The notes beneath the pieces were generated by a model. It was not told the origin of the DNA. It saw only the letters and a list, made by a program, of their open reading frames with translations, and ran no database searches. A stretch of 38,962 bases of DNA. Source: Octopus bimaculoides. Taxonomy: Eukaryota. How positions within the stretch are numbered: position 1 is the first letter of the stretch; the number at the start of each line of letters is the position of its first letter. The translations under genes were made by a program, and so were the position numbers. Below, piece after piece: positions 13,073-13,583 of this stretch. The stretch spans positions 112,338,537-112,377,498 of the forward strand of contig NC_068984.1 of assembly GCF_001194135.2 (NCBI RefSeq), in the 5' to 3' direction.

Positions 13073-13115
13073 AACACATTTCAGCTGATGTACTCTCCAG
13101 CCTTCATCAGGTGTC
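13073..13115 (-). ncRNA. Minimal type I hammerhead ribozyme motif, degenerate (3-nt deletion in the helix III palindrome)
   Basis: RNA reads GACAC CUGAUGA A GGCUG GAGAGUACAU CAGCU GAAA U GUGUU. Core boxes CUGAUGA and GAAA are intact, helix I is GACAC/GUGUU and helix II is GGCUG/CAGCU. Confidence 0.7.
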
Positions 13116-13165
13116 CTGGGGGAATTTCAAACCTGGGTTCTCATTCCTAAGGTATTTTCCCGATG

Positions 13166-13204
<39 letters not shown>

Positions 13205-13402
13205 TCACTGGAATCAAACTCAGAATCTTGGGGCTAGTAGCCCATGTTCTTAACTATTATGCCATATGCCCGTGGGCAATTATGAAGTGAATTTTAGGGC
13301 TTATAAACCTAATATTTATTGAAAGACGTGCTTGTTTATGATGAACTTTCTCTGTATGTCTCCATTGAAGTTTAATGTCTGCTCCGTACCTATTAGATAA
13401 TA

Positions 13403-13583
13403 GAGTTCTATATTTGAAAGATGAGGAATTATGTACATTATTTACATTTGACGGATATTTGTCCTCATTTTGTTTGTTGTTGACACAACGTTTTGGCTGA
13501 TGTACTCTCCAGCCTTCATTAGATGTCCTGGGGCTATTTCAAACCTGAGTTCTTATTCTTAAGGTATTTTTTCGCTGCTATTA

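What the first reader, a model, noticed from the sequence alone, without database searches (positions are those of the whole stretch)
13073..13527. Two complementary-damaged hammerhead ribozymes reconstruct an intact minimal, dimer-type hammerhead
Seen in sequence: copy 1 (13115-13073, minus) keeps CUGAUGA and GAAA but lost 3 nt of helix III. Copy 2 (13527-13482) keeps the ACGU palindrome but has two core G-to-A changes. Their consensus is GACAC CUGAUGA A GGCUG GAGAGUACAU CAGCC GAAA CG U U GUGUC, with a 5-bp helix I, a 5-bp helix II, a single A-U pair for helix III and a predicted GUU cleavage triplet. Established: minimal type I hammerheads with palindromic helix III are typical of Penelope-like element termini and can cleave as dimers (Cervera and de la Pena 2014; Lunse et al. 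2017). Inference: an active genomic family exists and these two copies are inactive.
Basis: partly seen in the sequence, partly recalled or inferred. Interest (0 to 1): 0.85.

Follow-up and report, generated by a model that had tools for sequence, protein, structure and literature searches.

The report
Decayed hammerhead motif in octopus SINE
Two neighbouring copies of an old octopus SINE (a short mobile element) each carry a mutated remnant of a minimal hammerhead ribozyme, the kind known from Penelope-like retroelements; it is probably a relic of a self-cleaving RNA, but none of the four copies found is intact and this kind of element is already known in other animals.

Summary
Two 85%-identical repeat copies carry, on the minus strand, a hammerhead-like motif with complementary defects. 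The repeat is not a Penelope-like element (PLE) terminus. It is a tRNA-related SINE whose sense strand is the window's minus strand: a head with A and B boxes, an internal (AAT)n, then a ~180-nt body. The motif lies in the sense strand of the body.

The window is Octopus. I found two more copies in 122 kb of O. vulgaris, arranged as a head-to-head pair flanked by a 13-nt target duplication. All four copies are broken in the catalytic core.

Their consensus meets every sequence feature published for PLE-type minimal hammerheads: CUGANGA, an extra base after A9, G10.1-C11.1, GAAA, an ACGU palindrome, U-H and a 5-bp helix I. A descriptor that matches this consensus found nothing in 200 Mb of random sequence.

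Two points of the reconstruction remain open. G12 is present in one of four copies and rests on a CpG-decay argument. The 3-nt helix III segment is present in two of four. There is no compensatory covariation, no Rfam hit and no intact copy.

Verdict: probably a genuine but dead minimal hammerhead, a new member of a known kind.

The parts
13073..13115 (-). Hammerhead-like motif, copy 1. It has helix I GACAC/GUGUU, an intact CUGAUGA, the extra A, helix II GGCUG/CAGCU closed by a G-U pair at 10.1-11.1, and an intact GAAA. The 3 nt that would supply 16.2, U16.1 and H17 are missing.
13482..13527 (-). Hammerhead-like motif, copy 2. It has helix I GACAU/GUGUC, CUAAUGA (G5>A), the extra A, helix II GGCUG/CAGCC with G10.1-C11.1, AAAA (G12>A), the ACGU palindrome and U17.
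13201..13277 (-). tRNA-related head of SINE copy 1. It contains an A-box-like TGGCATAATAG (13264-13254) and a B-box-like AGTTTGATTCC (13220-13210). The head starts with GCCCACGGGC.
   Evidence: The same head precedes (AAT)n and the body in both O. vulgaris copies. The box consensus sequences are from my own knowledge. ARAGORN and Rfam do not call a tRNA here.
13171..13200 (-). Internal (AAT)10 microsatellite between head and body of copy 1.
13025..13170 (-). Body of SINE copy 1. Its 3' part is cut off at about 13025, where the (ATT)n tail of a neighbouring plus-strand SINE abuts.
13404..13585 (-). Body of SINE copy 2, complete to the family's 3' end (...ATATAGAACT at 13413-13404).
   Evidence: Homology with the O. 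vulgaris left arm ends at the same base.
13586..13621 (-). (AAT)n upstream of copy 2's body. No head follows. Unrelated abundant SINEs are nested from 13622 onward, so copy 2 is either 5'-truncated or its head was displaced.
13418..13471 (-). Inverted repeat in the 3' part of the body. The arms are AAGAUGAGGA (AAAAUGAGGA in copy 2) and UCCUCAUCUU, a possible 10-bp 3' stem-loop. It is present in copy 2 and in the O. vulgaris left arm.
   Evidence: That it forms a structure is inference.

Best explanation
The two motifs are mutated remnants of a minimal type I hammerhead ribozyme that sat in the sense strand of an old Octopus SINE.

The element, read 5' to 3' on the window's minus strand, has:
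- a tRNA-related head with RNA polymerase III A and B boxes;
- a short (AAT)n;
- a body of about 180 nt with no A-rich or simple-repeat tail.

The founder's motif most likely read GACAC CUGAUGA A GGCUG-loop-CAGCC GAAA CG U U / GUGUY.

Helix III is reduced to the self-complementary ACGU. A single RNA therefore cannot close the third helix. Two motifs, on one read-through transcript or on two RNAs, would pair ACGU with ACGU and exchange helix I strands to form a double hammerhead. Each would cleave after GUU. This is how the minimal hammerheads of Penelope-like elements (PLEs) are thought to work.

The copies sampled are neutral, decayed insertions about 7-9% from their common ancestor, and none can cleave.

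Shown: the anatomy, the family, the orientation and the per-copy defects. Inferred: the ancestral sequence at G12 and at the 3-nt segment, any catalytic activity, and the link to PLE machinery.
For: 1. Exact sequence and coordinates are confirmed.

2. The window is Octopus. Its repeats hit O. bimaculoides and O. vulgaris proteins.

3. Two further copies lie in O. vulgaris chromosome OX597816.1 (locus L013).

4. In three of the four copies the same head with A- and B-box-like sequences precedes (AAT)n and the body. This places the motif in the transcribed sense.

5. The four-copy consensus satisfies a min-HHR descriptor. It shows the features that Cervera and de la Pena list as not imposed by their search: a base between A9 and 10.1 (4 of 4 copies), G10.1-C11.1, palindromic 15.2-16.2, and a 4-5 bp helix I (PMC4209133).

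6. CUGANGA is intact in 3 of 4 copies. The one transversion in the box (U>A in the O. vulgaris right arm) falls on N7, the only free position.

7. The descriptor has 0 hits in 200 Mb of random sequence.

8. The 11.1/12 dinucleotide reads TG, CA, CA, TA in the four copies, the usual footprint of an ancestral CpG. CpG observed/expected is 0.47 in this DNA, with TG+CA in excess. Three other sites in the element show the same pattern.

9. All five substitution differences between the two window copies are transitions, and the hammerhead-compatible state is always the G or C state. In this family C>T and G>A (about 7%) outnumber the reverse changes (1.5-2.6%).

10. The helix I plus helix II fold is within 1.2 kcal/mol of the minimum free energy of the consensus. 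The consensus folds better than shuffles, z = -2.4.

11. Both loci hold paired copies: tandem in the window, head-to-head in L013 with a 13-nt target duplication. The other roughly 100 kb of O. vulgaris DNA holds none. Tandem and inverted composite insertions are a PLE hallmark (PMC8557442; PMC6765202).

12. Penelope-like elements are present and recently active in O. vulgaris (PMC13282606).
Against: 1. No copy is intact.

2. G12, the general base, is present only in copy 1. Plain parsimony favours A. Using the CpG decay rate measured on an abundant octopus SINE of similar age (CG 59%, TG 16.5%, CA 16%), ancestral CG and CA are about equally likely. Only the higher rate seen within this family (about 0.3 per strand) pushes CG to about 0.9.

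3. The 3-nt segment is present in 2 copies and absent in 2. The short form, GAAA-Y-GUGUU, is not a hammerhead. The two short copies also share T at 11.1, so a non-hammerhead subfamily, or even a non-hammerhead founder, is possible.

4. There is no compensatory covariation. Helix changes are C>U wobbles, which neutral decay also produces, plus one broken pair.

5. Rfam hammerhead models do not match any of the four copies, even at E<=10 in searches of about 600-700 nt.

6. A 4-bp intermolecular helix III is weak. The double-hammerhead fold (-22.3 kcal/mol) is less stable than two monomers (-26.4) or an extended duplex (-32.2).

7. CUGAUG can also pair with CAUCAG within the motif, and this is the minimum-energy fold of copy 1.

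8. Only four copies were obtainable.
Confidence: 0.62

Rival explanations
1. Look-alike. The SINE body never carried a working hammerhead. Its founder had CAGCCAAAA or the short GAAA-Y-GUGUU form, and the resemblance comes from a hairpin flanked by UGAUGA-like and A-rich sequence. Choosing the favourable state at each variable site amplified it.
For: G12 is present in 1 of 4 copies and the 3-nt segment in 2 of 4. With the independently measured CpG decay rate, ancestral CG is no better than CA. There is no covariation and no Rfam hit. Damaged hammerhead-like sites arise by chance about once per 0.9 Mb of single strand.
Against: Dropping G12 raises the chance rate only about 6-fold, from about 2.5e-11 per nt (my estimate; one search gave 0 hits in 200 Mb). 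The remaining agreement is still far beyond chance for a 180-nt element: CUGANGA, the bulged A, a 5-6 bp helix II flush with both boxes, AAA, ACGU, U-H, and a 5-bp helix I in register. It also matches the specific PLE min-HHR architecture. A second, unrelated hammerhead-like repeat with the same 'GA-A-G...C-GAAACGU' layout occurs in the same genomes.
Confidence: 0.27
2. One reading: the repeats are termini (pseudo-LTR fragments) of Penelope-like elements, not a SINE.
For: The motif has minimal type I hammerhead architecture. The copies are paired, lie next to microsatellites and lack a poly(A) tail.
Against: Three of four copies start with the same tRNA-related head carrying A- and B-box-like sequences. 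All copies share defined 5' and 3' ends within about 300 nt. No RT or GIY-YIG coding sequence lies in the window or next to the L013 pair.
Confidence: 0.06
3. The motif is a kink-turn or box C/D-like module (UGAUGA ... CUGA closed by a terminal stem), or some other structured-RNA fragment captured by the SINE.
For: Copy 1 reads C-UGAUGA ... CUGA-AAU between the GACAC/GUGUU stems.
Against: CUGA is present in only one of four copies. The spacer is a self-paired 21-nt hairpin with no guide region. There is no significant snoRNA match in Rfam; the best is E = 9.
Confidence: 0.03

Closest known systems
Minimal type I hammerheads (min-HHR) of metazoan Penelope-like elements (Cervera and de la Pena 2014, PMC4209133; Lunse et al. 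2017, not readable here)
   Same: Both have the CUGANGA and GAAA boxes, an unpaired base between A9 and 10.1, G10.1-C11.1, a 4-5 bp helix I with no defined loop 1, and helix III reduced to a palindrome (A-CG-U). Both are expected to need dimer formation. Both occur as dispersed, highly variable, mostly single and decayed copies, next to microsatellites and as paired insertions.
   Different: Here the motif sits in a tRNA-related SINE, not in a PLE pseudo-LTR. Helix II is 5-6 bp with an 8-10 nt loop. No intact copy and no PLE partner have been identified.
Schistosoma Sm-alpha / Sj-alpha SINE-like elements with a hammerhead (Ferbeyre et al. 1998 and Laha et al. 2000, as summarised in PMC6765202)
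   Same: Both are short non-autonomous retroposons with a pol III-type promoter region followed, in the same strand, by a type I hammerhead with a short helix III.
   Different: The schistosome ribozymes are canonical, with loop-loop contacts, and are experimentally active. The octopus motif is the minimal PLE type, inferred only from decayed copies, and there is no sequence similarity.
Metazoan non-LTR retrozymes (Cervera and de la Pena 2020, PMC7229834; bioRxiv 10.64898/2026.07.22.740005)
   Same: Both are non-autonomous elements with type I hammerheads, thought to depend on PLE machinery. In both, two ribozymes on one transcript are needed.
   Different: Retrozymes are head-to-tail tandem arrays of 150-450-bp units with a hammerhead in each unit. 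Here the two window copies are separated by 122 nt of unrelated sequence, each unit has its own defined ends and a tRNA-related head, and the O. vulgaris pair is inverted.
Newt satellite 2 and viroid double hammerheads (Forster et al. 1988, cited)
   Same: A short helix III makes the monomer inactive, and two motifs combine into a double hammerhead.
   Different: Those have a real, if short, helix III with a loop, and cleavage has been shown experimentally.

Membership tests
Hammerhead ribozyme, minimal type I (PLE-type min-HHR) | CUGANGA box (C3 U4 G5 A6 N7 G8 A9) | tested here: met
   The box is intact in copy 1 and in both O. vulgaris copies. Copy 2 has G5>A. The only other change is at N7.
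Hammerhead ribozyme, minimal type I (PLE-type min-HHR) | GAAA box (G12 A13 A14 A15.1) | tested here: inconclusive
   GAAA is present in copy 1 only. The other copies read AAAA, AAAC and AAAA. An ancestral G12 rests on the CpG-decay argument, with a posterior of roughly 0.5-0.9 depending on the decay rate used.
Hammerhead ribozyme, minimal type I (PLE-type min-HHR) | Helix II flush with both boxes, closed by G10.1-C11.1, with one unpaired base between A9 and 10.1 | tested here: met
   The extra A is in 4 of 4 copies. The closing pair is G-C in 2 copies and G-U in 2. The helix is 5-6 bp, with one broken pair in one copy.
Hammerhead ribozyme, minimal type I (PLE-type min-HHR) | Palindromic 15.2-16.2 (A-CG-U) followed by H17, with helix I in register | tested here: inconclusive
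   The feature is complete only in copy 2 (ACGU-U). The O. vulgaris right arm reads CCAU-U. Copy 1 and the O. vulgaris left arm lack 3 nt.
Hammerhead ribozyme, minimal type I (PLE-type min-HHR) | Helix I of 4-6 bp flanking the core | tested here: met
   All 20 cells pair (5 bp in 4 copies). The three changes are C>U wobbles.
Hammerhead ribozyme, minimal type I (PLE-type min-HHR) | Compensatory covariation in helices across a family | tested here: not met
   No double-sided change occurs among the four copies. Four copies are too few for this to count strongly either way.
Hammerhead ribozyme (Rfam Hammerhead_1 and related models) | Match to the curated covariance models | tested here: not met
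   No hammerhead match at gathering score, nor at E<=10 in short searches around all four copies. The reconstructed consensus could not be submitted to this tool.
Hammerhead ribozyme | Site-specific Mg2+-dependent self-cleavage | not testable with these tools
   This needs in vitro transcription of monomer, dimer and helix-III-extended constructs.
Penelope-like element terminus (pseudo-LTR) | Motif lies in the terminal repeat of an element encoding RT and GIY-YIG endonuclease | tested here: not met
   There is no such reading frame in the window and no Pfam hit on its longest non-repetitive frames. The unit has a tRNA-related head and defined ends of about 300 nt.
tRNA-derived SINE | 5' tRNA-related region with A and B boxes, tRNA-unrelated body, dispersed copies with target-site duplication | tested here: met
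   The A box is TGGCGTAGTGG and the B box AGTTCGATTCC in the best copy, about 44 nt apart start to start. Four dispersed copies occur in two species. A 13-nt direct repeat flanks the L013 pair. ARAGORN and Rfam find no tRNA, so 'tRNA-related' rests on the boxes alone.
Non-LTR retrozyme | Head-to-tail tandem repeats, each unit with a type I hammerhead | tested here: not met
   The sequences between and beyond the two window copies are unrelated. The O. vulgaris pair is inverted.

The most novel reading that the evidence does not exclude
This may be a SINE that borrowed the minimal hammerhead of a Penelope-like element and is mobilised by PLE machinery. If so, the ribozyme, together with the 3' stem-loop, would be the part of the RNA the PLE enzymes need. 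The paired tandem and inverted insertions, and the palindromic 5' end that joins two cDNAs head to head, would be the footprints of that mechanism. It would be a clear SINE-PLE partnership in a cephalopod, with a natural minimal substrate for asking what PLE hammerheads are for.
Probability: 0.2. Interest if true: 0.6.

Novelty: new member of a known kind. Interest (0 to 1): 0.35.

Why it matters
Minimal hammerheads are known by the thousand in animal genomes that carry Penelope-like elements (PLEs). SINE-like elements with hammerheads are known from schistosomes. Another decayed family in an octopus is therefore expected biology rather than a surprise.

The modest interest lies in the carrier. 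A tRNA-related SINE with a PLE-type minimal hammerhead in its sense strand, inserted as tandem or inverted pairs and without an A-tail, would be a compact natural system. It could be used to ask whether PLE enzymes recognise or need the ribozyme, a question the literature leaves open.

The case also shows how far a 'complementary damage' reconstruction from two copies can be trusted. Most of it held up with more copies. The catalytic G12 did not clearly do so.

Tried and rejected
1. Rfam at gathering and at permissive thresholds gave no hammerhead or tRNA match for any copy. ARAGORN found no tRNA.

2. An exact 20-mer scan of the JGI metagenome, GTDB genome and IMG/VR collections returned only chance matches inside bacterial coding sequences.

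3. Looking up the short reading frames that cross the repeat found nothing on record.

4. A protein search with the concatenated six-frame translations of the repeat found nothing.

5. A transposon-derived frame at 38573-38845 led only to an unidentified eukaryote in ENA assemblies that lacks the repeat and the common octopus SINE.

6. I first read the (ATT)n as the 3' tail of a plus-strand retroposon, which would put the motif on the antisense strand. I rejected this once the O. vulgaris copies showed that the tRNA-related head, (AAT)n and body form one unit on the other strand.

7. Tandem-repeat (retrozyme) reading: rejected, because the inter-copy sequences are unrelated.

8. Orthology of L013 with the window: rejected, because only repeats match.

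9. MAFFT misplaces the 3-nt gap of one copy, giving 9 mismatches against 4 for the hand alignment. The pair counts were therefore made on the hand alignment.

10. A literal sequence search of the paper library and searches for hammerhead plus octopus or cephalopod found no prior description. The only related item is 235 Rfam Hammerhead_1 matches reported in the giant squid.

11. Lunse et al. 2017 could not be read.

Full report
**The observation**

On the minus strand the window reads as follows.
- Copy 1, 13115-13073: GACAC CTGATGA A GGCTG GAGAGTACAT CAGCT GAAA T GTGTT.
- Copy 2, 13527-13482: GACAT CTAATGA A GGCTG GAGAGTACAT CAGCC AAAA CGTT GTGTC.

Copy 1 has both conserved boxes but lacks three bases after GAAA. 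Copy 2 has the ACGT palindrome but carries G5>A and G12>A.

The motifs are embedded in two direct copies of a longer repeat, about 85% identical and 409-412 bp apart. These are the only copies in the window.

**What the repeat is**

The window is a gap-rich draft of an Octopus genome. A repeat-derived reading frame from it hits O. bimaculoides and O. vulgaris proteins. That hit gave access to six 20-kb pieces of the O. vulgaris assembly GCA_951406725.2.

One piece, L013, holds two more copies of the repeat. Comparing the four copies shows one unit of about 300 nt, whose sense strand is the window's minus strand.
- A head begins GCCCAYGGGCATATGG. It carries an A-box-like TGGCGTAGTGG and a B-box-like AGTTCGATTCC; the box consensus sequences are from my own knowledge.
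- A short (AAT)n follows the head.
- A body of about 180 nt ends ...ATATAGAACT, with no A-rich or simple-repeat tail.

Copy 1 has head, (AAT)n and body. Its 3' part is cut off where another SINE's (ATT)n tail abuts. Copy 2 has (AAT)n and a complete body but no head, and unrelated abundant SINEs are nested from 13622.

The hammerhead-like motif therefore lies in the transcribed sense of a tRNA-related SINE, not at a Penelope-like element (PLE) terminus. ARAGORN and Rfam do not recognise a tRNA in the head. The window has no RT or GIY-YIG reading frame and no Pfam hit on its longest non-repetitive frames.

I had first taken the (ATT)n for a plus-strand 3' tail, which would have put the motif on the antisense strand. 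The O. vulgaris copies rule that out.

**The motif in four copies (hand alignment)**

| Copy | Sequence |
|---|---|
| c1 (window) | GACAC CTGATGA A GGCTG...CAGCT GAAA T--- GTGTT |
| c2 (window) | GACAT CTAATGA A GGCTG...CAGCC AAAA CGTT GTGTC |
| vR (L013 12405-12450, +) | GATAC CTGAAGA A GGCTG...CAGCC AAAC CATT GTGTT |
| vL (L013 12110-12068, -) | GACAC CTGATGA A GGGTG...CAGCT AAAA C--- GTGTT |

- CUGANGA is intact in three copies. The only change other than c2's G5>A falls on the free position N7.
- The unpaired A after A9 is in all four copies.
- Helix I pairs in all 20 cells.
- Helix II pairs in 23 of 24 cells.
- Every copy is nevertheless broken somewhere in the core.

The copies are related as a star, with pairwise identity of 82-88% and two or fewer informative sites for any grouping. 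Each is thus about 7-9% from the founder. On the calibration in PMC13282606, that is comparable to the age of the O. vulgaris / O. bimaculoides split. Two to four hits in a 46-nt motif is what neutral decay predicts.

**Is the consensus a hammerhead?**

The majority consensus, with the two open sites resolved as below, is GACAC CUGAUGA A GGCUG GAGAGUACAU CAGCC GAAA CG U U GUGUU.

It matches a descriptor modelled on the published minimal hammerhead. It has the four features that Cervera and de la Pena list as emerging beyond their search pattern (PMC4209133):
- a base between positions 9 and 10.1;
- the G10.1-C11.1 pair;
- palindromic 15.2-16.2;
- family structure.

They also describe a 4-5 bp helix I. 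The descriptor found nothing in about 200 kb of real sequence, both strands scanned (404 kb in all), other than through the consensus. It found nothing in 200 Mb of random sequence. My analytic estimate is about 5e-9 per nt for the loose form and about 2.5e-11 per nt at the candidate's stringency. Chance is not a serious explanation for the consensus as reconstructed.

**The two weak points**

First, G12 is present only in c1. The 11.1/12 dinucleotide reads TG, CA, CA, TA, which is the footprint of an ancestral CpG.
- CpG is depleted in this DNA, with observed/expected 0.47 and TG+CA in excess.
- Three other sites of the element show the same pattern.
- With the decay rate measured on an abundant octopus SINE of similar divergence (CG 59%, TG 16.5%, CA 16%, against 5-6.5% for non-CpG C>T and G>A), ancestral CG and CA are about equally likely under a star tree.
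- With the higher rate seen within this family, CG reaches about 0.9.
- I put ancestral G12 at about 0.7.

Second, the three bases that supply 16.2, U16.1 and H17 are present in c2 and vR and absent in c1 and vL.
- The context CGTTGTGT is prone to slippage, and independent deletions are more plausible than two near-identical insertions.
- However, c1 and vL also share T at 11.1, so a short subfamily that is not a hammerhead cannot be excluded.

At all five substitution differences between the window copies, the hammerhead-compatible state is the G or C state. In this family C>T and G>A changes are three to four times more frequent than the reverse.

**Other tests**

- Rfam's hammerhead models match none of the four copies, even at E<=10 in searches of about 600-700 nt.
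- There is no double-sided compensatory change.
- The consensus folds into helices I and II within 1.2 kcal/mol of its minimum free energy and folds better than shuffles, z = -2.4.
- The double-hammerhead pairing of two motifs (-22.3 kcal/mol) is less stable than two separate monomers (-26.4) or an extended duplex (-32.2).
- CUGAUG can pair with CAUCAG inside the motif, which is the minimum-energy fold of copy 1.
- Low intrinsic activity, even as dimers, is what has been reported for PLE minimal hammerheads.

**How easily a damaged hammerhead turns up**

Allowing two core mismatches and 4-bp helices, Markov-random sequence gives 7 hits per 6 Mb. That is about 0.36 for the 312 kb of octopus sequence scanned.

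Three hits were found. One is copy 2. The other two belong to a second, unrelated repeat with the same layout (YUUU CUGWNGA A GAGC GUAG GCUC GAAACGU M AAAG):
- window 21339-21305, minus strand;
- L008 16051-16016.

A third copy lies in L009. This shows that hammerhead-like repeats of the PLE style recur in these genomes. It also shows that a single damaged copy would not be convincing alone.

**Mechanism**

The following is inferred, not shown. The founder SINE's transcript carried a minimal type I hammerhead. With helix III reduced to ACGU, a monomer cannot fold into the active form. Two motifs would pair ACGU with ACGU and swap helix I strands, and each would cleave after GUU, as proposed for PLE hammerheads and first for newt and viroid RNAs.

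Both loci contain paired copies, while the other roughly 100 kb of O. vulgaris DNA sampled has none.
- The window pair is tandem, 122 nt apart.
- The L013 pair is head to head. The two arms share a single 10-nt palindrome GCCCATGGGC at the junction, and the composite is flanked by a 13-nt direct repeat ATTACTAGTTTTA.

Three observations fit mobilisation by PLE machinery but do not prove it:
- tandem and inverted composite insertions and a liking for microsatellites are PLE traits;
- PLEs are active in O. vulgaris;
- the SINE has no A-tail.

**Comparison and novelty**

The closest known things are:
- the minimal hammerheads of metazoan PLEs, which have the same architecture but a different carrier;
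- the Sm-alpha and Sj-alpha SINE-like elements of schistosomes, which have the same kind of carrier but a canonical, active ribozyme;
- non-LTR retrozymes, a related idea, but these are tandem arrays, which this is not.

I found no prior description of this family or of hammerheads in octopus in the library searched. Hammerhead_1 matches have been reported in the giant squid.

This is a new member of a known kind. Interest is modest, because all copies seen are dead and activity is untested.

**Limits**

Only four copies could be obtained, because no tool here searches an octopus genome by DNA. The decisive analysis is a genome-wide family alignment followed by a cleavage assay.

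Noticed in passing
window 21305-21339 (-); L008 16016-16051 (-); L009 about 13126-13261 (-): A second, unrelated hammerhead-like repeat of about 100-140 nt. Its motif reads YUUU CUGWNGA A GAGC-GUAG-GCUC GAAACGU M AAAG. It has the bulged A and the ACGU palindrome, and microsatellites flank it ((TA)n in L008). Two of the three copies have U at the essential A6, so its status as a hammerhead is open. 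It may be a truncated PLE 3' end.
   Followed up: partly
L013 11967-12510 (O. vulgaris OX597816.1): Two SINE copies lie head to head and share a single 10-nt palindrome GCCCATGGGC (12260-12269) at their 5' ends. The composite is flanked by the 13-nt direct repeat ATTACTAGTTTTA (11967-11979 and 12498-12510). One arm lacks the last ~30 nt. This suggests one insertion event in which two cDNAs annealed through the palindromic 5' end (twin priming or snap-back). The arms are only 82% identical, so the event is old.
   Followed up: partly
window 13586-14100 and 14400-14710: Unrelated, abundant octopus SINEs (GGCCGTGAGCTGGCA... head, (ATT)n tail) have nested into (ATT)n arrays, at 13622-13835, about 13872-14050 and 14484-14709. 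The same family occurs 3-9 times per 20 kb in the O. vulgaris loci.
   Followed up: partly
window 13404-13471 (-), and the SINE head: The 3' part of the SINE body holds a 10-bp inverted repeat (AAGATGAGGA / TCCTCATCTT). From memory, the TTCCTCATCT...AAAT stretch and the head (GCRTAGTGGTTAAGAG) resemble the CORE-SINE / MIR type, to which the octopus OR1 SINE is said to belong. This was not tested.
   Followed up: no
window 26133-26569, 27567-27796, 29854-30123, 31830-32350: A repeat with long open frames (LQSDL.EFLQLDALPNANHS...) occurs at least four times in the window and four times in L013. Its translation is embedded in O. vulgaris 'hypothetical predicted proteins' and in O. bimaculoides UniRef entries named C2H2, WD40-like and sulfatase-modifying-factor proteins. 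Those gene models probably include repeat sequence.
   Followed up: partly
window 38573-38845 (+): A 91-residue transposon-like frame (…RKPDIVLIEKENKLCWIIDIACPADNRV…VVPIIVGALGTV…) has no Pfam match. It is 72-80% identical to short called genes on megabase contigs of ENA assemblies ERZ25066843 and ERZ25066847, next to RVT_1 genes. Those contigs come from an unidentified eukaryote that lacks the common octopus SINE.
   Followed up: partly
window, whole; L008-L013: CpG is strongly depleted, with observed/expected 0.47-0.48 while GpC is about 1.0 and TG+CA is in excess at 1.27-1.39. At consensus CpG sites of an abundant SINE, about a third of copies read TG or CA.
   Followed up: yes
window 12005-12499: A trinucleotide-periodic ATC/GAT-rich stretch gives a 164-residue His-rich frame on the plus strand and Asp-rich frames on the minus strand. 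It could be a low-complexity exon or a degenerate microsatellite.
   Followed up: no
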